Shown piece by piece: positions 6,601 through 55,079 of a DNA stretch of 64,000 nt. The stretch covers positions 18,166,001 to 18,230,000 of the forward strand of contig OZ249439.1 in assembly GCA_965235115.1 (NCBI GenBank). The letters run 5' to 3'. The notes under the pieces are model-generated. The model did no database searches. It was not told where the DNA came from and saw only the letters and a list, made by a program, of their open reading frames with translations. A program made the position numbers and the translations under genes. This DNA comes from Laetmonice hystrix. Taxonomy: Eukaryota. The first letter of the stretch is position 1. Every line of letters starts with the position of its first letter.

Positions 6601-9600
6601 TTGTAATCCAGGTTTATGGTTGGTGGAAGCCTTGTCGTCTTGTGCTGCCTCCTGGCGGCCCTGGTCGGTACTACCAGAGACCCTCCACTCGCCCTCTGTT
6701 CTATCGGTGGCAGGGGAGATCACAGCGTAATTGTCCACGTGTGGAGACTTCTCCCCGGCCCGGTACGGCCACCTCGGGGCTGAGCGCCGCCGCTGTCTCT
6801 GCTGGGGACCCGCCACGTCAGCCTGGTCCTCAAGGTGAGACGATATGTCCCACGGCATGGACTTGGATTTCTTTATGGCTGCCAAGATATGCTCTTGTTC
6901 TTCTTGAGATTTATGAGGAGGTGAGCCATCCTGAGTCCCACCTACCAGGAAGTCGCTGCTTGTGCTGCCCCTACTGCTGATACTTCCATACTTGTCCTTG
7001 GGCAATCCCCGGTCACTGCCGTTACCCGAGCTATCCATACTGCTCGAACTCAGTCTCTTCCCGGTCTTCATCTCAAAGAAGTTGATGACGGCCATGTGCT
7101 GAACCTTCTTCAGTTCGGGGTCGGAGGTACGGTGGCCATCGAGACTGCTCGTACTGGTAGACCTGCCAGAGCTTGGTCTGGTGTGTACCACAGTGTCGTG
7201 CGACCCACGGAACAGGTCGGAATCCCCGGACATCCTCTGGTCCTGTGGCGTGGACGGGTCAGATAAACGATGCTGGGACAACTTTCGGTATTCCTCAACA
7301 GATGGGTCTGAACTCCGATGGAAATGATCACGGTCTGGAGTGTTACCGTACTGGGTTGGATCGGAGTTCTTGTGGCGCTGGATGGGGTCCGACAACTTGT
7401 GAGGTTTGTCCTTAGGCTCGACGTCTGAAACCTTCTGCTTGTCGCCACTTCTCTCTTGGTCACCAATTCTTTCCTTCATGGGACGGATCTGTTCTGAAGT
7501 TGTCCGTTTGAGTTTCTTGGACTGTATGTCGTTTGAATTCAGCTTTGTGGACGACTTGCTACTGGTACTGGCCAGGTCCCACTCCTGTGAGAAGCCGGTA
7601 CCGTCGTGATGCTGTCCTGACTCCCGTCGCACCTCGTCGCCCCGTGGACGGTTGTACCATCTCCTGGGTTTCTCCTTCTGTTGAGGCTCGCACTGCTGCT
7701 GAATGTCTCGGATCTCCTTGTAGTTCTGACGGGAATGATTGCCTGAGGGAACGTTGGACATGGAAACGGATTTCTTGTGACTTCCTAATGACCTTATACT
7801 ACTATAGTCATCCACATTTTCAATCTCCTCAAAAATGCCAAAAGCCTTTCTTAAGGATAGCTTTTTGCTGCGGTCAAACTTAGTACCACCGCTCTTTTGT
7901 CTCTTTGTTGCTTCCTTGTCTGTGGAAGAACCACTTTTACTGTTTGTATCCTGGCTATTATCAGCAGTCTGTCCCTGTATATGTGTGGCCTTGGTGGCTA
8001 CAGCCTGGCTGGCCTCCTGGTTCGTTGCCTCAGAGTCCGGTGACCAGTAGTCCTTGGCCATGTGCCGATGGAGCACGGGGTCCACGGTCCTCCTGCGGCC
8101 CACCTCGGAGGACGGTTCCTGGGGGGCGAGCAGGCGGCCATGGTTGGTCTGCCGCTGGTCTGGGCCGTACCTAGAGTAGCCCAGGCCAGACTTCGCCTGG
8201 TTACCAAAGAACTCCTGCGACAGCTTCCTCAGCATGGAGGTCTGACTGGGCGAGTGGTCATTGATCTGTTGGAGGATCGTGTCCTTAAGGTCACCACTCC
8301 CCTTGCCATCCCCTCGACCGTTCTCCTGAAGTCCAACCTCATATTTCTTTGGACTTTCCTCCCGAATTGTCTCCGGGATGCGGTTGCCTTGCTCCATTTT
8401 ATCAACAATGGGCGCAGTGCGATGCTGGTTTATACCTGACACAGACTGGATACTACTGAGATCAGCATAGTTGTCATGCCCCATGCTGCCGGCTGCTGCC
8501 TGTAACCCATCACTTGTCACATCTGACAACATTGACGGCTGCACCTGACAGCCTTGGTCAGCCTTTTTATGTTTTCTCCTCTCCAGGGTGGACATCGGGG
8601 TGGCAATAGGGGTGACCGTCACCAGGTCCATGTTGACCTGGATCTCCACATTACGGAAGAGAGGTTCAGTGACGACAGGAGCGGCCGCCGTGCGGGGAGA
8701 CATGACTGTATGGGTCGGGTAATACTGATGAGAACTGTGGGCCAGGGCAGCAGACGCTACCTCTGTCTGAGTACCCGTGTTATAATAAGGTTTTTGACGA
8801 ACTATAATGGTATGACCTTGCCCCGACCTTTGCTTGGAAGGCATTGGTGGCGGAGCAGTCTGTGGTAATGGCGGTGCACTCTGGGCGGAGGGTGGGGCTG
8901 ATTTGGGAAGGGATGGGGCTGGACTGGACGGGCTGTTCTGGTCAGTTCTGCGGCTATGGTCACCGTATTGATGGAGTAAACTATCCAGACTGGATGTGTC
9001 CTTCGCACTCTCTCCTTTCCTTTCGGTTTCCTTCCCCGAGGGAAGACCATAGTCCCGCTCAGTTCTCGACTCATACACATACGGGTAGGAGGGTTTCACA
9101 TTGTACAGGTTCTTAATCTCAACCTCCCCCTTCGAGTCTAATAGGAATGATGTAAGCCCAAGTTCATTATCATCACCGTCAACTTTACCCCCAAAAGAAT
9201 GTTTGATAAATTCGTCGGGCCCTATGCCACTGTCTGCCTTCTCCTCAACATGAGGATTGAGGCGGGGTTGGTACGAGGCCCACGAGTTGGCGCGCGACCC
9301 TGTCTTTGTCTTATCCTCCTCTGGACTGGAAACTGGCCACGATGGTATCCGCTCGTGGCTCAGACTGGACTTCATGTACCTGACCTTGGAGTCCTCCCGT
9401 AATGGAGGAATGGGCGGTACAGGAGATGTTATAGACATCCCTACCCCAGAGTCCTCACTCAACATTTTACGGTGGTCTGCCCCATCTTTAGGCCAGGGCG
9501 GGATTTCTGGTGGCTCTGGGCTGTGGTCATTTCGCAAGAACCCATCTGGAAACGTTCTGGAGTGTGTAAGGTTAGAGTAGGAATGTGAATACGCTTGGGC

Positions 9601-10444
9601 TTGTATGGGACTAGCATGAGACGCAGGACTCGTGGCAGCTGCTGCATTTCGGGCTGCCTCAAAAGCATCAATGTTTTCATAGTTATTGGCCTTGTATGGG
9701 GTGGGCCTACTCCAGTAGCTATAGTCCCGTGTGTACATGGGTGTCCTGTAAGCCGCCGAGTGGCCCTTGTCGGCCGAGGCGGGGTCTCCATGCCGTATAT
9801 CCTGCATAGAGTGCGCTGTCACCACGTTTGGCTGACTCGGACCATAGTTGCCATGAGACTGGCCGTGACCAGGCAGAACACTGTGTGACTGCGAATAGGA
9901 CGATGACAAACTAACACTGTTGGTATCCTCAGACAGGTCGTTAAATATGCCTGACCTAGAGCGCGGAGAGAAAGGTAATCCGGAATCTCTACTCGACATG
10001 TCGTACGACGATGACGACGCCTTGCGCCGAGAATCGATGGGTTTGTCCTCCTGAGGGCTCCCACTCACGCTAATGTTGGACATGGAGTTAGGAACTCCGT
10101 GCCATGACATGGACGGCGGAATGCCCGCCGCCGGCCCTGTCGACGACCCGCCCCGGTGGCTGTCGTGCACCCCCAGCGTACTCGCCGACTTGGTGGGGCC
10201 CAAGTTTTGTAGACTCTGGAAGCTTGCATAGCTGCTCATGCTCAGTGAGTCTGCAGAGTTGGCCACATACTGCATGCTGTTGTTCAGCGAATGTTTCGTT
10301 GCTGGTCCACTCTTGACCTCATTGGGCAACTTGCTACCTTTCTTCTCAGCAGGCCTCACTTGCGCCACCTGCTGGTTCTTGTTTGCATCAATGGGATGCC
10401 ACGATACCGGCCGGTCCCGTTTAGTGGCACTGGTGCTTCGAATA
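6601..10444 (-). CDS. Shroom: Giant internal exon (3844 nt, phase 2 to phase 0, ~1281 aa) of a Shroom-family protein
   Basis: Part of the 1308-aa ORF 6580-10506. Acceptor ttctgtctttgcag|T at 10445/10444; donor CAA|GTAAGG at 6601/6600. S/P/H/Q-rich disordered sequence. Ordered motifs match my recollection of vertebrate Shroom2/3: RPVSWH (RPHSWH); SSRDSG (KRDSA); PPLREDS..ERIPSW (PPARSDS..ERPSSW); PSQTSMLRKLSQE (PQETPLLHSLTQE); PELKKVQHMAVINFFEMKTGKR (PELKQFQQSALADYIQRKTGKR, end of ASD1). The family call is from memory, not a database search. Confidence 0.85.
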
Positions 10445-11294
10445 CTGCAAAGACAGAATGGAGAGTAACACATTAGAACTATGAGCTCACAATTTGTTGA
10501 GTACACTAAGAATATACCTGATCTGATCCAATGTTACATTGTATGGACAGGAGTATTACTAGGTAAACAGGACTATGTGTGAGGGCAGTCTTCACGTTAT
10601 ATTCCCCCACCTTATATATACAACAGTCCTGTTATCCATCGTCTCACGGCCGCCCACCGTTACAGTGGTTTAACTTTGACATGTTATTGTTACATTTATC
10701 AATAACCCTTCCTCCTCATACACACACCACTGTCACTATTCTCGTCACAGCAGCGACAACAACACCCAGCTCAGTGTGACAACAGTAATAGGGAGCACCT
10801 GTCACCTCCACGCCTGTCAGTCTCACCTGGCCACACCTGGTCCAAGCCTATACACCCAGCCTAACTCGGGCTTTCTAATACTTCCTGGGTACCTTTCCGC
10901 CCAGCATAAACCAAAAGTGGAAATGTCGACTTTCCGGGGTTTAATTTTTTTTTTTTGCTGAAGCGGTTTTCCTACTACAATCGAAGGTCAAGGCAGTGCG
11001 GTACGTCAGCCTCTATTTACTGAACATGCGCACCAAGCATGGAATATATCTAGAGATATCTAAATAATGACACGTCACAGCTAATAAATAGGTCAACACC
11101 TTAACCTAGAGAAATAGAGAGAAGAAAGGCTGAATCTATCACGAGACCTTACTTATAATCTCTACGAAGAGGAACAAAGAAATTTTAAGGAGACTTTCAA
11201 AGCGAAGATGAGTAATGAAAGATTAAATTTAACCAAATATCACATTTCGCACCCATGCCACAGGACGCGACACTGTTCAGTAAATCATACTCAC

Positions 11295-11312
11295 CTCTGT
11301 CCTTGGCCCATT
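11295..11312 (-). CDS. Candidate 18-nt micro-exon A-ATG-GGC-CAA-GGA-CAG-AG (MGQGQ+S), phase 2-2
   Basis: Acceptor gttatatttgctcag|; strong donor GAG|GTGAGT; strong Kozak context AGAATGG; 850-nt intron to the giant exon. Confidence 0.55.
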
Positions 11313-11717
11313 CTGAGCAAATATAACGATCACATTATACAGGCAGTATCATATTGTATGGGTGTGGTCTTTTGTAAAGACCTACAAACTGTCATTAACT
11401 TTGGTCAATTTGTACGAGTCTTGTTAGGTTTTCGTGTATTCGTGACACTGTCCGTTACAAATAAGGCAGAGTTTGGCACATCGTCTGCAACAGTTACCCC
11501 TTGGTAACGCTGAACACACCAACATTGGGTCGTTACATATCGTAACCAGTGCCAGGACACCACTGATTGTATACCGTCAGCTTGTTTATACACCTTTCTG
11601 TATTCTGTTCTGATCCCAAACGTATAATTTCCAGCACCTGTTGACCTGTTCTCTAACATTCCGACATATATTCATATAACTGGGTTGTGTACATGTTGCA
11701 ATACCAATCCTCGTAAC

Positions 11718-11905
11718 GTCTTATTTCCACTCCCGTCACGGGACACTTGGGGGTATGACATGGTGTGTATGTACATGTAGTTCACATGTCCATCATGAAC
11801 CGAGGATCTGTAGTCTTATTTCAACTCCCGTCACGGGACACTTGGGGGTATGACATGGTGTGTATGTACATGTAGTTCACATGTCCATCATGAACCGAGG
11901 ATCTG
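11718..11905. repeat. Tandem duplication, 95 bp x2
   Basis: Near-identical copies start at 11718 and 11813. Confidence 0.95.
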
Positions 11906-11927
11906 AAGGTTGTGATCCAAGACCAGA

Positions 11928-12431
11928 GAATGCCAGTGAAAACGTCCCCATGCAAGGACGTCCCTAAGTGAAAACGTCCCCAGCCACCACCGGTCCTATG
12001 TCCGCCCCTCGGCATGCTCCCGCTGATCCACTGGTTGGAAAATGTATTCCATGAAAAGAATGATTTTACTTTGGGCCATATATACTTTGTACTTTCGAAG
12101 GCCGATGTCATGAAATGTGTTCCGCGAGGAGGTAGGGAAGGGAGAGGAGGGCTTGGATATGCCGGGAACACGGGCGGCAGGGTGGGGCGGACACGACCGG
12201 GCGGATTTTGCGAGACCGGGGTGGATATGTTGGGCATTCTCTCAATCTAATATAACTTTATAAGGCCTGTAACAAGGTATCACACTAACATGTAACAAAC
12301 AACTCACAAATAGAGTCTATGATATAGGCCTATAGGAACAATACATAGGCCTAATGCCAATGGGGACGTTTCACCTTGGGGACGTTTTCACTTAGGGACG
12401 TCTTTGGTTGGGGACGTTTTCACCTGACACC
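11928..12431. mobile_element. Non-autonomous DNA transposon (MITE, hAT-like), ~504 bp
   Basis: ~47-bp inverted repeats GTGAAAACGTCCCCA-N6-GACGTCCCTAAGTGAAAACGTCCCCA at 11936-11982 and (reverse complement) 12377-12423. An 8-bp direct repeat AGACCAGA at 11920-11927 and 12432-12439 lies exactly 8 nt outside the IR core on each side. No transposase ORF. Confidence 0.7.
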
Positions 12432-15400: not shown

Positions 15401-17125
15401 CCTAAAGCCAGCTTTATTTTGGGTTTGGGTTGATCTTTCCCTGTAAATGACCCGACTACTGACATACGATCTACACTATTTACCCGAGAAGTGAGAATAG
15501 AACGCCCACAATGATTCTGCTCCCCGACCTCTGATACTGGCCAGGCCGTCTCTGACGACTGTGTGGCTGGCTGGCTGGCCGGAGGTTGTGGGGTTTAGGA
15601 TCAGGCTATACTTAACGTTACCACCTGATCAAAGCTGCCGACCGTGTTAGTAAGGTAGCATTTCCTGCGCCGAGCTGCACAAAGCTCACTCTAATCCCGA
15701 CTTAGTGCCAGACATAGGTCCCCAATGTATTCAGCTTGCATCATCTACTTCAAACTTGGCTTTTGCCTCAATCGTAGTTGACTGACGACCATGGGTATTA
15801 TGCTGTAAACATTTGAACTAATCAATGATAAACATAGTCGGGCACCATGGTGCAGCCATAAAAAAAAGGCATCAAACATCTTATGACGTATTACCTTTCT
15901 AAACGTTCTCTAGGGAGGTCATTCAGTCAGGCCGCGCTCGTAACTCTCAATAACTTTACCCTTTGGTAGATCTCCTTATCCTGTGGGTTCCCCGTCCCAG
16001 CGTCCATCCATTGGTGGCAGACCACAGATACAGTGTCCCCTATTAATGACCTGGCAGAAGAACCCCAGGAAGCAGGCACAGGGCCATCCTCCACTGCCCA
16101 CCCCACCCCCTCCCACGTTCTTCACCTTGATTCCATGTGACAAAACCATCAGGTCCACTTCTCTCTCTTTCTGTCACATTGTTACTGGTGGCAGCCACGG
16201 ACATTAGGAGTCCCATCAAATTACAATCTGCAAACTTCTCGACTGGCCCACATGGGAGCTAAGGTCACATTCCTCGACTGTTTCCTCTGGACGGTTCCCA
16301 CCCCGTGGTGGAACTCTCGGCTCACCCAGTGACCACACACACTAAGGTGGACTCCCACCAACAATGGGCCACCACAGTTACGAGTTCCATTCATGTGCTA
16401 ATTGTTTCATTAAGCTCCATCTCTGAGTCATATTTGGTGGCGGGGGATTATGAAGTCAGACCAGTATTGTTAAACTTTTGATGTGTTCGGGGCAAAGTGG
16501 AGCCAGCCTACACTGCAGCACAGATCTATCATTACATGCCGTTTGCCAAACACCTCTTCTTGACACCGACTTCTTGTTAAGAATACCATGGTTGTAAGTC
16601 CGGCCCTGGAAGCCTACACACTCAGTGTATCACTGCCGCCAAGCTTTCTGTCTGCTGGGTTCCCTGGAATGTCCCACAACGTACCGCCTCCACAGTCTAC
16701 ATCCTCCACGCCATATTGCACGGATCACAAACATTTCCTATATGCATACAATTCAAAACACCAAATAAAATATGGATATTTTATATATATAAAGATGTTT
16801 TACCTAACATTTTCATTTGGTGATGCTCTCAGTCGATGGCAGCACCCTCCAACAACTTTTCCCAGTACCTGGGGAACCATACATTTCTAAGTGAGCCCAT
16901 TCAGGGTGAGTCATTGCCACCTAGCCAAACACCTTTCACCATGAATAATTTAGGAATTGATTGATAAAGTAAACCTAACCTATTGACGGTTGACCCACGG
17001 TCTGACCCGACCTACATGCCCACACTGGCTGTGAACATGACCTGTGATCAAATGTTCTTCCAAACAGACACCAACCTAATGACCCCTACAATGTCACCAT
17101 ACGCAGTCGAGACGGCCTCCTGGTG

Positions 17126-17358: not shown

Positions 17359-17785
17359 GAGAGATGAACAGGTGTCCCCTCCCGGACTGCCCACTCCACC
17401 ACTGGCGCCATTTATCAACACCAGTCCTCCTATTCACCAGGATGTCTGTGGTCCTCCACCATCTGTGGATTTTTGTACCGTTTTGTGTTGGTAAGATGGG
17501 CGTAGAGTTCCTGGGTAGAGGGGCGGGTTGGCTTCACAGGGAAGCATTGCATTAAAGATGGGGAGATTACACGTGAAAGAGGATGCCATCACATACGTCG
17601 AGTTCACATCAAGATTTCTGCTTCAAGTTCTTCACATAAAGGTCCTGCTGGTGTCAAATTTCTTCCCCCATTACCTTTTAGAATAGAGATAATTTCAAGT
17701 ACCACCCAAAACAGGAACTCCGCCCTGAATATGCTCAGAGCCTGGGCTCCCTCAGACACTACATTCTGAGTAACGCCTTTCTGTT

Positions 17786-18578: not shown

Positions 18579-20960
18579 ACAGGTATTGTTGGACATTTCT
18601 GGAGATTTCTTTTTATCAGAAATCGGATCAGCATACCAGTGGACTGACTTCTGAAGGACATGATATTGTCCAGCACCACACTCCCACCTACAATAATAGT
18701 GAGGAAGGTCCAATGACCTGACAGGTCTGACTGACACGGCCCAAACCTGTCCCGTGCCAACCAACAGGCTTTCTATCAATATAATATACTACCGTATGTT
18801 CACCAATCATCGACTCAGATGCTGTCTGACATCGATTAGCTTTAACAATACAAAATGTAATATCCTGCATGCTGGAACCACAGGTCGTCATAATAACATT
18901 CACCTTAATCCACTGGCAATGAATTTTCATCCCCTTCTCAGTTTAACACAGCCTGTTCTGGACCTTTAATTTCGCCCCCCCCCCCCCTTGGCAACACACA
19001 TAAACCAGATCAAATCAAGGTTGCTACTTTATTGATAACAGCTTAAGGAGCGCGTCAGCTTTCGATCCCTGGCGTCCACCCTTTGTGAGAGCAGCCAGGT
19101 GTGTGGGGGGTACAGGTGTCAGTCTGTCATCAGGTAGGCATCCCTAACATCACACCTGTCCCTGGGTAAACCTTCCCGATACATACCCCTGGCCTCCCCT
19201 TTGATCGTCAGATCACCACACTGACAGTTCCACCTTATCAAACCTCAACACCTCACTGCCTACTCGGCTAAGTTTCGCAGTGTTTTGTGCCAGTATTCTA
19301 GTATGTCTATTTCACGGCTGCCCTATCTTGATTGGCCTAATACCAGGAGATGATTATCAAATACCCTCACGGTCACCAGGAGCTTTTCTGTTTCCTTGGC
19401 GACAGGCTTTCTCTACCAAGCCAACAAAATCCCGAAAGATAACATCCTACAGTTGGTACCTCTCCACAACAATGACACGCAGTCAGGCCTTGTCATTCAG
19501 CCATCTCAGAGAACGTCACTTTCTCTCTATCCTGACCTCTGACGTAAGAAACGTTCGAATTCTGAACGTCCAGGTGCCATTCAACCATCCAACTGCAACT
19601 GATTGTTAAAATCCTCAGGGGTTCTCTATACTTGTAGGTCAAACCCAGCTGGGGTGACGCCATCCCGACGGTTGATCTATTCACGTTAGGACGTCATCAG
19701 GGCCACTCCCCGGCGGGGGTCCGGGTGGCCGTGGTCACTGCCGACTACGACTCAGGGGGTTGGTCTCACTCTCTGTACAGGAATCACCATCATTGTTCCA
19801 TTTCAGTTCTCTTTGCGGACTTAAACTTATGATTTGCTGCTGTTGAAATAAAGTATTGCATTTTCACATTCTTGCCAATTACTTTCTTTTTGTTGTTGGA
19901 CACAATCAAAATTGGAAACCCAAAATTGGCTTGGTCACAACATGAGGCACTACACACTGTCATTGTTAGACCCTGCCACCGGTTGTAGTCATTACCACGA
20001 CCATAACGGAACATTGTTCACGACACTTGGCAATGGTTGGATGCACTCGGCATGTAGGTAACACCTCAACTAAGATCAACAACATCAGTCTATGAAAACA
20101 TACGCGACTTTTTCCACGTTCGTACCTTTTGACTACGTGGTTTATCTCCCCAACTGTACTTTAAAAGGTTTTATTGTTAACTTGAGATTACGTCTCTAAT
20201 GCTCGATAATCAACACAATGTAGATCACAAGATAAGGGTACCTTGTAAACAGGGGGTATGATACCGATGTAACTTCTCCTGGGTGATAGAAACACACCTA
20301 GTCTCATAAAGGTGAGAATATATTACATCTAATTCTAGGATTTGAAATGGTTCAGTGATGTAGCGTTAAATTTCTGTCCAACTGGTCCTTTGACACTCAA
20401 GAGCCTGAGTGCACAGCACTCTACAGAGCACTTCCTCTCTGGGGAAGTGATTGTTCTAGTTGACCTTTCCCATGACATATTCCCAGGAGACATAGGTGGA
20501 ACACGTACATTTCACTCCTAGTTAGTTCATTGTTCCTTTTCACTCGTTGGAATTTTACTATCTGCGTGACTTTCCGTCTAAAGAAAGTTCCATCCCTGAC
20601 AAATGTTTCTGAACATTGATACTGACAACAAAATATTGGTGTCTAGCTAGCCATGCATGCGATCGATTAATTTTAAACCGACACACCACTGAACCATCAC
20701 TGAATATTCATGTCTTTTAAAGATTGCTACACCCATTTATCATGGTACTGTAAGCCACTGCTTAAAGGTCAGGGGTCATCTCTGTCAGCGACTGTCCTCA
20801 TCTAACTCCCATCGACGGTCTTCTCCACACAAAGGGTGATGTCAGTTAGGGATTTGGTGGGGATGGGGTTGTTTTCTGATGATTTTATTCTTACCCTTAC
20901 CTTGTGATTGAACCCTGTTCATCTAGTGATCGAAACCGTGAAATCTGTCAAACCATTAAC

Positions 20961-23607: not shown

Positions 23608-23628
23608 CACTGACCACTGCCACCCATT
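23608..23628 (-). CDS. Candidate 21-nt micro-exon A-ATG-GGT-GGC-AGT-GGT-CAG-TG (MGGSGQ), phase 2-2
   Basis: Branch-like CTGAC plus ttcattgcttgccag| acceptor; donor GTG|GTGAGT; Kozak AGAATGG. Confidence 0.45.
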
Positions 23629-42777: not shown

Positions 42778-43349
42778 GGCCTGGGACATGATCCCCATGG
42801 ACCACTAACTTACTCCCATGGAATGCCACCGGCCTGGGACATGATCCCATGGACCACTAACTTACTCCCATGGAATGCCACCGGCCTGGGACATGATCCC
42901 CATGGACCACTAACTTACTCCCATGGAATGCCACCGGCCTGGGACATGATCCCCGTGGAGTACCAACTTACTCCCATGGAATGCCACCGGCCTGGGACAT
43001 GATCCCCGTGGAGTACTAACTTACTCGCATGGAATGCCACCGGCCTGGGACATGATCCCCATGGAGTACTAACTTCCTACCAGAGGATGCCACCGGCCTG
43101 GGACATGATCCCCGTGGAGTACCAACTTACTCCCATGGAATGCCACCGGCCTGGCACATGATCCCCATGGAGTACTAACTTACTCCCATGGAATGCCACC
43201 GGCCTGGGACATGATCCCCGTGGAGTACTAACTTACTCCCAGGGAATGCCACCGGCCTGGGACATGATCCCCATGGAGCGTTAACTTCCTACCAGAGGAT
43301 GCCACCAGCCTCGGACATGATCCCAATGGAGCGCTAACTTACTCCCAGG
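42778..43349. repeat. Minisatellite, 53 bp x ~11
   Basis: GGCCTGGGACATGATCCCCATGGAGTACTAACTTACTCCCATGGAATGCCACC with variants. Confidence 0.97.
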
Positions 43350-43831
43350 AAAGTTGTGAATGGAAACTGTCCATAGAACTCCCTGGCATTTTTCCTGTGT
43401 GGCAGCTGGAGTTCTCCACCTGGTCGTCCTCGCTCAGATGCCTCAGATATTTGTTCATATATGGTCCGGATAACATGACAATTACAATAACTTTATCCTG
43501 CTAGTAATGACGCAAGAGATGACGTATATCACTGATGTTGTGTGTATAAAATAGTCATTAAGTCATTGTCCAGTGAAAATCCTTGACGTTCAGGAATTCC
43601 GTGTATGAAACCAATTTTTCCATGTAGGTCACCACTAGACGAAGCTAACCTGACTTTTCATTCTCCATTGTCGCTTACAGATTCACTCACGGCCTTAACA
43701 GCACACTCTGTCCTTAACTTAACAATAACAGAGTAGGGAAAAAAGATGGTCCATGTTCCCTCGATGTCGTGTGAAACAATCTCCGCCTACTGTGTAGTAC
43801 CATCCATTTCTTACAACTCATTCCATGTTAC

Positions 43832-55043: not shown

Positions 55044-55079
55044 CCATTACCCATGGATTTGGAAGTTGCCAAGACTCAC
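55044..55079 (-). other. Candidate recursive splice site (55080/55079) with a 36-nt RS-exon containing an in-frame TGA followed by ATG-GGT-AAT-GG
   Basis: taattaatgtatgccctctttttatttgcag|GTGAGT places a strong 3'ss directly against a consensus 5'ss. A second consensus donor TGG|GTGAGT lies 36 nt downstream. Confidence 0.55.

What the first reader, a model, noticed from the sequence alone, without database searches (positions are those of the whole stretch)
10445..11312. 18-nt exon completes a canonical MGxxxS myristoylation signal only when spliced to the giant exon
ATG GGC CAA GGA CAG AG|T ATT CGA AGC gives MGQGQSIRSTSATKR. The position-6 Ser codon is split across the 850-nt intron (AG|T). 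The donor (GAG|GTGAGT) and Kozak context (AGAATGG) are both strong. Basic residues follow (R8, K14, R15, R17), as in many myristoyl-plus-basic membrane anchors. This is the best-supported member of the set.
Basis: partly seen in the sequence, partly recalled or inferred. Interest (0 to 1): 0.7.

Follow-up and report, generated by a model that had tools for sequence, protein, structure and literature searches.

The report
Conserved start-codon microexon of annelid Shroom
An 18-base exon conserved in three related worm genomes carries an ATG and, once spliced to a 3.8-kb exon of a Shroom-family cell-shape gene, gives a protein start (Met-Gly-x-x-x-Ser) that looks like a lipid-anchor signal, but no RNA data were available to show that it is spliced in or that translation starts there.

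Summary
On the minus strand, an 18-nt exon (11312-11295, ATG at 11311) has a pyrimidine tract and CAG acceptor one base before the ATG. It has a GAG|GTGAGT donor, then an 850-nt intron to the acceptor of a 3,844-nt exon (10444-6601). The spliced product starts MGQGQSIRSTSATKRDR.

In one genome this could be chance. The MGxxxS-plus-donor pattern is expected 0.25 times in the 53 kb upstream. Conservation settles that the exon is real. Two orthologous loci (76% and 54% protein identity) carry the same 18-nt exon 0.9-1.4 kb upstream of the same acceptor. They encode MGQGYS and MGKTFS, and the exon is the only upstream element shared by all three. The full pattern is expected at most 0.007 times per locus.

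The gene is a Shroom-family member. It has the only ASD2 domain in the genome, about 45 kb downstream on the same strand, and no PDZ hit within about 2 Mb on this contig.

Two things are not shown: splicing and initiation at this ATG. No RNA run exists, and the three available runs are genomic. The exon has an acceptor and is six codons long, so it could be an in-frame cassette behind an unseen upstream coding exon. Myristoylation is a motif-based inference. This scan also noted this same stretch once before (note s1-311000), on the same DNA.

The parts
11313..11335 (-). 3' splice site in front of the microexon: pyrimidine-rich tract (ttatatttgctc) and CAG, with AG at 11314-11313
   Evidence: Read. 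The equivalent tracts in L001 (ttgtgtttgccTAG) and L002 (ccctttctcccaTAG) end at the same place, one base before the ATG.
11295..11312 (-). 18-nt microexon A ATG GGC CAA GGA CAG AG: one base, then Met-Gly-Gln-Gly-Gln and the first two bases of the Ser-6 codon
   Evidence: The pattern occurs once per locus in three species, against at most 0.007 expected. Depth is flat and single-copy, and no variant lies in it in three genomic runs of one sample.
11309..11311 (-). Candidate start codon
   Evidence: ATGGGC is identical in the window, L001 and L002. An in-frame stop lies 6-9 codons upstream in the genomic DNA of all three. Use as the initiator is not shown.
11289..11294 (-). 5' splice site GTGAGT after GAG
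   Evidence: L001 has CAG|GTGAGT and L002 has CAG|GTAGGT. Reading through it gives a stop after 6 codons.
10445..11294 (-). 850-nt intron between the microexon and the giant exon
   Evidence: It does not align with L001 apart from its two ends. All SNPs and indels seen in the runs between 10445 and 11312 fall inside it.
6601..10444 (-). Giant exon of 3,844 nt. Its first base T completes the Ser codon. It then encodes IRSTSATKRDRPVSWHP... through 1,281 codons of mostly low-complexity protein and ends CAA|GTAAGG
   Evidence: Orthologous open frames were found in more than 20 invertebrate assemblies. The acceptor position, the phase and the first base T are the same in all 10 loci examined.

Best explanation
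The 18-nt stretch is a genuine, conserved microexon of the single Shroom-family gene of this (probably annelid) genome, and it most likely carries the start codon.

Proposed mechanism:
1. The microexon is spliced behind a still unidentified, probably non-coding 5' exon.
2. It is joined to the 3.8-kb exon, which gives the N-terminus Met-Gly-Gln-Gly-Gln-Ser-Ile-Arg-Ser.
3. After removal of Met1, Gly2 would be N-myristoylated by the genome's N-myristoyltransferase.
4. The following basic residues (R8, K14, R15, R17) would add electrostatic membrane affinity.
5. The result would be a lipid anchor at the cell cortex for a Shroom that has no PDZ domain.

Shown: the sequence features, their conservation in three species, the Shroom identity of the gene, and the presence of NMT.
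Inferred: inclusion in mRNA, initiation at this ATG, lipidation, and the membrane role.
For: Sequence as described.

Conservation of the exon:
- L001 (76% identity by HMMER, 70% by BLASTP) has ...tttgccTAG|AATGGGCCAAGGATACAG|GTGAGT, 909 nt upstream of the same acceptor.
- L002 (54% by HMMER, 43% by BLASTP) has ...tctcccaTAG|CATGGGCAAGACTTTCAG|GTAGGT, 1,437 nt upstream.
- Between the window and L001 the upstream 10-18 kb aligns only at a few short colinear islands, one of them this exon (E 7.6e-7). None of the other islands is found in L002.
- The full pattern occurs exactly once per locus, against 0 to 0.007 expected in shuffles.

Fit to the NMT motif:
- M1, G2 and S6 are invariant while residues 3-5 differ (QGQ, QGY, KTF). 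Position 5 is uncharged and position 7 is Ile.
- This fits the GXXXS preference. The Lys-3 form has a precedent in ARF6, a known NMT substrate (PMC7044312).
- NMT is present in the genome.

Why translation should start upstream of the giant exon:
- The first 20-odd residues of the giant exon (S-I-R-S-T...DRPxSW) are conserved and lie before its first Met, so coding must begin upstream.
- No conserved coding exon was found in 18 kb (L001) or 8.6 kb (L002) upstream of the microexon, compared with the window's 53 kb.
- No PDZ hit lies within about 2 Mb on this contig.
- Upstream in-frame stops lie in the genomic DNA of all three species.

Shroom identity: the only ASD2 domain in the genome lies on the same strand, with colinear exons in between.
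Against: No RNA evidence is available.
- The only runs that hold this DNA are genomic, and their contigs cover the intron evenly.
- No transcript-derived protein fragment was found.
- The junction is absent from metagenome contigs and is not present as a retrocopy in the genome.

The exon has a conserved acceptor, so an upstream exon exists whose content is unknown. Its length, 18 nt, is a multiple of three. A candidate exon at 55079-55044 (ATG GGT AAT GG|) would read in frame into it.

No comparable exon was seen within 10 kb upstream in four more distant orthologous loci (L007, L008, L009, L012). L003, L010 and L013 had too little upstream sequence.

The one annotated relative, Lamellibrachia satsuma KAI0229537.1, starts MEATMFPETNTG, not Met-Gly. 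That model looks poor.

Ser-6 is partly forced by splice-site consensus (AG|GT plus a conserved T).
Confidence: 0.5

Rival explanations
1. The 18-nt exon is real but is an in-frame, six-codon cassette microexon inside a longer reading frame. That frame starts in an unseen upstream exon. Met-Gly is then internal and this glycine is not myristoylated.
For: - A conserved pyrimidine tract and YAG acceptor sit one base before the ATG in all three species, so an upstream exon must exist.
- The length of 18 nt is conserved and is a multiple of three.
- Conserved intron flanks are typical of regulated microexons.
- The candidate exon 55079-55044 ends in the right phase and would give MGNG-MGQGQS.
- In Lamellibrachia an annotated short upstream exon supplies 11 codons plus 2 nt in the same phase.
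Against: - ATGGGC is identical in three species while the next three codons are nearly saturated with changes, which is unexplained for an internal Met-Gly.
- tblastn found no conserved coding exon upstream.
- No PDZ hit lies within about 2 Mb on this contig.
- The 55-kb exon has the form of a recursive splice site, whose short exons are usually not retained (established knowledge, not tested here).
- The 23.6-kb candidate is not conserved.
Confidence: 0.27
2. The ATG is the true start, but the protein is not lipidated. In that case the Met-Gly...Ser pattern reflects start-codon context and splice-site consensus, not selection for an NMT substrate.
For: - G at +4 is the Kozak preference, which makes Gly, Ala, Asp, Glu and Val common second residues.
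- The AG at the exon end and the T at the start of the next exon are splice-related and give Ser automatically.
- Only three species, two of them close, carry the motif.
- Position 7 is Ile, not the preferred Lys.
Against: - GG at +4/+5 is kept, not just G.
- All three N-termini avoid every known NMT-disfavoured residue: no charge at position 5 and no Pro at position 7.
- A basic stretch follows in all three.
Confidence: 0.15
3. Chance: an ATG next to a GT in a long intron, not an exon at all.
For: In this genome alone, the MGxxxS-plus-donor pattern is expected 0.25 times in 53 kb. No RNA evidence exists.
Against: The same 18-nt unit, with acceptor and donor, lies at the orthologous place in two further species whose introns no longer align. 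The expectation is at most 0.007 per locus.
Confidence: 0.03

Closest known systems
N-myristoylation signals of the Met-Gly-x-x-x-Ser/Thr type followed by basic residues (Src-family kinases, MARCKS; ARF6 MGKVLSK for the Lys-3 form)
   Same: Gly2, uncharged residue 5, Ser6, no Pro7 and nearby Arg/Lys. The L002 form MGKTFS parallels ARF6, which has Lys3 and is a known NMT substrate (PMC7044312).
   Different: Lipidation is not shown. Residue 7 is Ile rather than Lys. The signal is built across a splice junction from an 18-nt exon. The carrier is a large, disordered cytoskeletal regulator.
Shroom family (ASD2-defined; Shroom1/Apx and the insect Shroom proteins lack a PDZ domain)
   Same: A complete ASD2 domain sits at the 3' end of the same-strand gene, preceded by very large exons. 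As in insects and Shroom1, no PDZ was found (PMC1481537).
   Different: No ASD1 match was found. A predicted N-terminal lipid anchor has not been described for any Shroom in the searched literature. The 14 papers holding both 'Shroom' and 'myristoylation' have neither word in title or abstract, and I did not open them.
Conserved animal microexons (3-27 nt, usually multiples of three, with conserved flanking intron sequence)
   Same: The exon is 18 nt with strong splice sites. Conservation extends about 40 nt into the upstream intron, and the length is invariant in three species.
   Different: Typical microexons are internal coding cassettes. This one appears to hold the start codon one base from its 5' end. 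Its inclusion pattern is unknown.

Membership tests
NMT substrate (N-myristoylated protein) | Gly directly after the initiator Met of the translated mRNA | tested here: inconclusive
   ATG GGC is present and conserved. In-frame stops lie upstream in the genomic DNA. However, the exon has an acceptor and no transcript could be obtained, so the content of the upstream exon is unknown.
NMT substrate (N-myristoylated protein) | Ser/Thr (or a small residue) at position 6, no Pro at position 7, no charged residue at position 5, residue 3 uncharged or Lys | tested here: met
   MGQGQSI, MGQGYSI and MGKTFSI, judged against the GXXXS rule, the S6/K7 preference and the intolerance of charge at position 5 (PMC7044312).
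NMT substrate (N-myristoylated protein) | N-myristoyltransferase encoded by the organism | tested here: met
   NMT_C (PF02799) exons on contig C12, 73.7 and 68.6 bits.
NMT substrate (N-myristoylated protein) | Covalent myristate on Gly2 | not testable with these tools
   Needs metabolic labelling or mass spectrometry.
Shroom family | ASD2 domain in the same gene | tested here: met
   The only ASD2 in the genome lies at C4:18126924-18129630 on the minus strand, split over four exons that cover profile positions 4-289. It is on the same strand, about 45 kb downstream of the giant exon. An intermediate 437-aa exon has its orthologue directly downstream of the giant exon in L010. Continuity in one mRNA is not shown.
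Shroom family | N-terminal PDZ domain (present in Shroom2-4 and in sea urchin and Ciona; not defining) | tested here: not met
   Among the 113 PDZ matches in the genome, the nearest on this contig is about 2 Mb from the gene.
Microexon | Exon of at most 27 nt bounded by AG and GT and conserved between species | tested here: met
   18 nt, YAG|...|GTRNGT in three species.
Microexon | Inclusion in mature mRNA | not testable with these tools
   No RNA run holds this locus.

The most novel reading that the evidence does not exclude
The microexon acts as a splice switch for a lipid anchor. It is exactly six codons long and sits behind a long intron with at least one further in-frame Met-Gly exon (55079-55044). 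Including or skipping it would then toggle Shroom between a myristoylated, membrane-tethered form and a form with a different or no anchor. Alternative splicing would in that way control where an apical-constriction effector acts.
Probability: 0.1. Interest if true: 0.7.

Novelty: new member of a known kind. Interest (0 to 1): 0.4.

Why it matters
Shroom proteins drive apical constriction by bringing Rho kinase to the apical cortex. In vertebrates their placement depends on the PDZ and ASD1 regions. A PDZ-less annelid Shroom that starts with a conserved myristoylation-type signal would suggest a different, lipid-based way of placing the protein at the cortex. It would also give a compact, testable targeting peptide. 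The gene structure matters for annotation too. A start codon sits one base into an 18-nt exon, so gene finders will miss it. The one annotated relative found here, the Lamellibrachia model, has a doubtful N-terminus and lacks the ASD2 end. If the exon proves to be alternatively included, it would be an example of a microexon that controls lipidation.

Tried and rejected
RNA and transcript evidence:
- RNA evidence was sought and not found. The look-up of sequencing runs gave three runs of one sample. When laid on the window they proved to be genomic, with contigs covering the intron and no joint at 11294/10445.
- A protein search with the first 180 residues of the giant exon, meant to catch transcript-derived fragments, found nothing.
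- Exact junction patterns for the window/L001 and for L002 are absent from metagenome contigs.
- The junction is not present as a retrocopy in this genome.

Other candidate exons:
- L003 candidates (MGRRGG and similar) were rejected because they lie in a G-rich tandem repeat.
- The 21-nt candidate at 23628-23608 (MGGSGQC) has no counterpart in 18 kb of L001 upstream sequence.
- Met-Gly hits at 42.8-43.3 kb lie in a 53-nt tandem repeat.
- Distant loci L007, L008, L009 and L012 have no MGxxxS exon within 10 kb. L003, L010 and L013 have too little upstream DNA.

Relatives and annotation:
- DNA for the P0004/P0027 species could not be fetched.
- The exhaustive protein search returned only open-frame calls of the giant exon and no RNA-supported full-length model.
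- The upstream exon of the Lamellibrachia model is not conserved in L007.

No informative result:
- Pfam on the giant exon: no domain.
- ESM Atlas on its conserved C-terminal part: no meaningful hit.
- Rfam on 10-13 kb: nothing.
- A nearby transcription start with TATA-like motifs about 27-39 nt before the ATG was considered. I rated it unlikely because it would leave almost no 5' leader.
- Papers naming the two NCBI assemblies: none.

Full report
**1. Observation**

Read on the minus strand, the window shows ...ttatatttgctcag|A ATG GGC CAA GGA CAG AG|gtgagtatg...
- The ATG is at 11311-11309, and the exon is 11312-11295 (18 nt).
- The donor GT is at 11294-11293.
- The next acceptor, ...ctgtctttgcag|T ATT CGA AGC..., puts the first exon base at 10444. 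The intron is 850 nt.
- The downstream exon runs to 6601 (CAA|GTAAGG). It is 3,844 nt, that is one base plus 1,281 codons.
- The spliced reading is MGQGQSIRSTSATKRDRPVSWHP..., with Ser-6 split AG|T and basic residues at 8, 14, 15 and 17.

Every letter and coordinate of the finding is correct. One internal inconsistency remains. Those two bases would not be in the mRNA.

**2. Is it more than chance?**

In this genome alone, no.
- ATGGG-N10-AG|GTR is expected 0.25 times in the 53.6 kb upstream of the giant exon (dinucleotide shuffles).
- A looser scan finds ten Met-Gly candidates against 2.9 expected. Five of them lie inside a 53-nt tandem repeat at 42778-43351.

Comparison with other species changes the picture.
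- Protein searches with the giant exon found open-frame calls of the orthologous exon in more than 20 invertebrate assemblies.
- I fetched the DNA around nine of them.
- In the two closest, the same unit is present. L001 is 76% identical by HMMER and 70% by BLASTP. L002 is 54% and 43%.
  - L001: ...tgtgtttgccTAG|A ATG GGC CAA GGA TAC AG|GTGAGT, 909 nt upstream of the acceptor.
  - L002...ccctttctcccaTAG|C ATG GGC AAG ACT TTC AG|GTAGGT, 1,437 nt upstream.
- Between the window and L001 the upstream region no longer aligns, apart from a handful of short colinear islands. One island is this exon with about 40 nt of its upstream intron (E 7.6e-7).
- None of the other islands is detectable in L002, so the microexon is the only upstream element shared by all three.
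- The full pattern (YAG, one base, ATGGG, ten bases, AG|GTR) occurs exactly once in each upstream region. Shuffles expect 0 to 0.007.
- The locus is single-copy in the genomic runs. All SNPs and indels seen between 10445 and 11312 lie in the intron.

I conclude that the exon is real.

**3. What the gene is**

- The giant exon has no Pfam domain.
- The genome's only ASD2 domain lies on the same strand at C4:18126924-18129630, about 45 kb downstream. It is split over four exons that cover profile positions 4-289.
- In between lie colinear, conserved minus-strand exons at window 6393-6271, 5125-4952, 3974-3891 and 3657-3331.
- A further 437-aa exon lies at C4:18150545-18151855. Its orthologue sits directly downstream of the giant exon in L010.
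- ASD2 is the defining feature of the Shroom family. Shroom1 and the insect proteins lack the PDZ domain (PMC1481537).
- Among the 113 PDZ matches in this genome, the nearest on this contig is about 2 Mb from the gene.

So this is a PDZ-less Shroom-family gene. Continuity in one mRNA is inferred, not shown. I did not test that, but the only named relative is from the annelid Lamellibrachia satsuma.

**4. Does translation start here?**

Points in favour:
- The first 20-odd residues of the giant exon (S-[ILV]-R-[SRA]-...-RPxSW) are conserved across distant species and precede its first Met. The acceptor position, the phase and the first base T are the same in all ten loci. Coding must therefore begin in an upstream exon that ends in phase 2.
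- The microexon is the nearest, and the only conserved, candidate.
- ATGGGC is identical in the three species, while 8 of the next 9 bases differ between the window and L002.
- tblastn of all window reading-frame fragments found no conserved coding exon upstream of the microexon. The targets were L001 (extended to 18 kb upstream) and L002 (8.6 kb upstream).
- In the genomic DNA of all three species an in-frame stop lies 6-9 codons before the ATG. If transcription started nearby, this ATG would still be first.

Points against:
- The conserved pyrimidine tract and YAG one base before the ATG indicate an internal exon, so an unseen 5' exon exists.
- Eighteen bases are six codons. An upstream coding exon ending in phase 2 could therefore splice either to the microexon or to the giant exon.
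- One such candidate is in the window at 55079-55044 (cag|GTGAGT...ATG GGT AAT GG|gtgagt). It would give MGNG-MGQGQS in frame. It has the form of a recursive splice site, and I could not test its conservation.
- In the more distant loci no MGxxxS exon lies within 10 kb.
- The annotated Lamellibrachia model begins MEATMFPETNTG. That model has a junk C-terminus, and its first exon is not conserved in L007.

**5. Transcript evidence**

None could be obtained.
- The only public runs holding this DNA are three genomic runs of one sample.
- No transcript-derived protein fragments exist in the protein collection.
- The spliced junction is absent from metagenome contigs and from the genome itself.

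This is absence of data, not evidence against the exon.

**6. Mechanism**

If the ATG is the start, the N-termini MGQGQSI, MGQGYSI and MGKTFSI all satisfy the NMT preference:
- GXXXS is met.
- Residue 5 is uncharged.
- Position 7 is not Pro.
- Lys3 is tolerated, as in the known substrate ARF6 (PMC7044312).

The genome encodes NMT, and a net basic stretch follows in all three. The most likely reading is a co-translationally myristoylated Shroom with a myristate-plus-basic membrane anchor.

Ser-6 is partly a by-product of splice consensus (exon-end AG, conserved first T). Its conservation is therefore weaker evidence than that of Met-Gly.

My estimates:
- The exon is real: about 0.95.
- Translation starts here, given a real exon: about 0.7.
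- The protein is lipidated, given that start: about 0.8.
- Overall: about 0.5.

**7. Novelty**

The searched literature holds no paper on a natively myristoylated Shroom. The 14 papers that hold both words carry neither in title or abstract, and I did not open them.

The finding is a new, predicted member of the NMT-substrate class, with an unusual gene structure: a start codon one base into an 18-nt exon. It is of moderate interest and worth a simple RNA and labelling test. It is not a new kind of system unless the exon proves to be a regulated switch.

Noticed in passing
window 11920-12431: A 512-bp high-copy repeat (word depth in the thousands, against about 60 for its flanks). One contig in each of the three genomic runs skips it, so it is an insertion polymorphism or an assembly alternative. 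It overlaps the 138-aa open frame at 11821-12237.
   Followed up: no
window 55044-55079 (minus strand): A recursive-splice-site-like unit, tttgcag|GTGAGT...ATGGGTAATGG|gtgagt (36 nt). Its ATG is in frame with the 18-nt microexon (MGNG-MGQGQS) and with the giant exon. It also suggests that the intron upstream of the microexon is longer than 43 kb. Conservation could not be tested because the fetched flanks were too short.
   Followed up: partly
window 23608-23628 (minus strand): A 21-nt look-alike microexon (ttgcttgccag|A ATG GGT GGC AGT GGT CAG TG|gtgagt, MGGSGQC). It has no counterpart in 18 kb of L001 upstream sequence and is probably chance.
   Followed up: yes
window 16384-16420, 17459-17510, 19077-19258, 20447-20485: Short islands colinear with L001 but not found in L002. 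They show no coding or consistent splice signal and contain TAAT-type and CAGGTG/CAGATG E-box-like motifs. They are likely intronic regulatory elements of the Shroom gene.
   Followed up: partly
window 42778-43351: A 53-nt tandem repeat of 10.9 copies. Its minus-strand reading produces several spurious Met-Gly 'exon' candidates.
   Followed up: yes
G000:C4:18150545-18151855 and 18128401-18129630 (outside the window, minus strand): Two further large Shroom exons (open frames of 437 and 410 aa). The second ends with the first 55 positions of ASD2, and the rest of the domain lies in three small exons down to 18126924.
   Followed up: partly
L008 6388-6422; protein P0028 (Lamellibrachia satsuma KAI0229537.1): The annotated gene model of the siboglinid orthologue starts in a short exon (MEATMFPETNTG) that is not conserved in the related locus L007. 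It ends in repeat-derived sequence without ASD2 and is probably a partly wrong model.
   Followed up: partly
window 15536-15538: All three genomic runs carry 34 extra bases here relative to the assembly (table 5c). This is a small assembly or haplotype difference.
   Followed up: no
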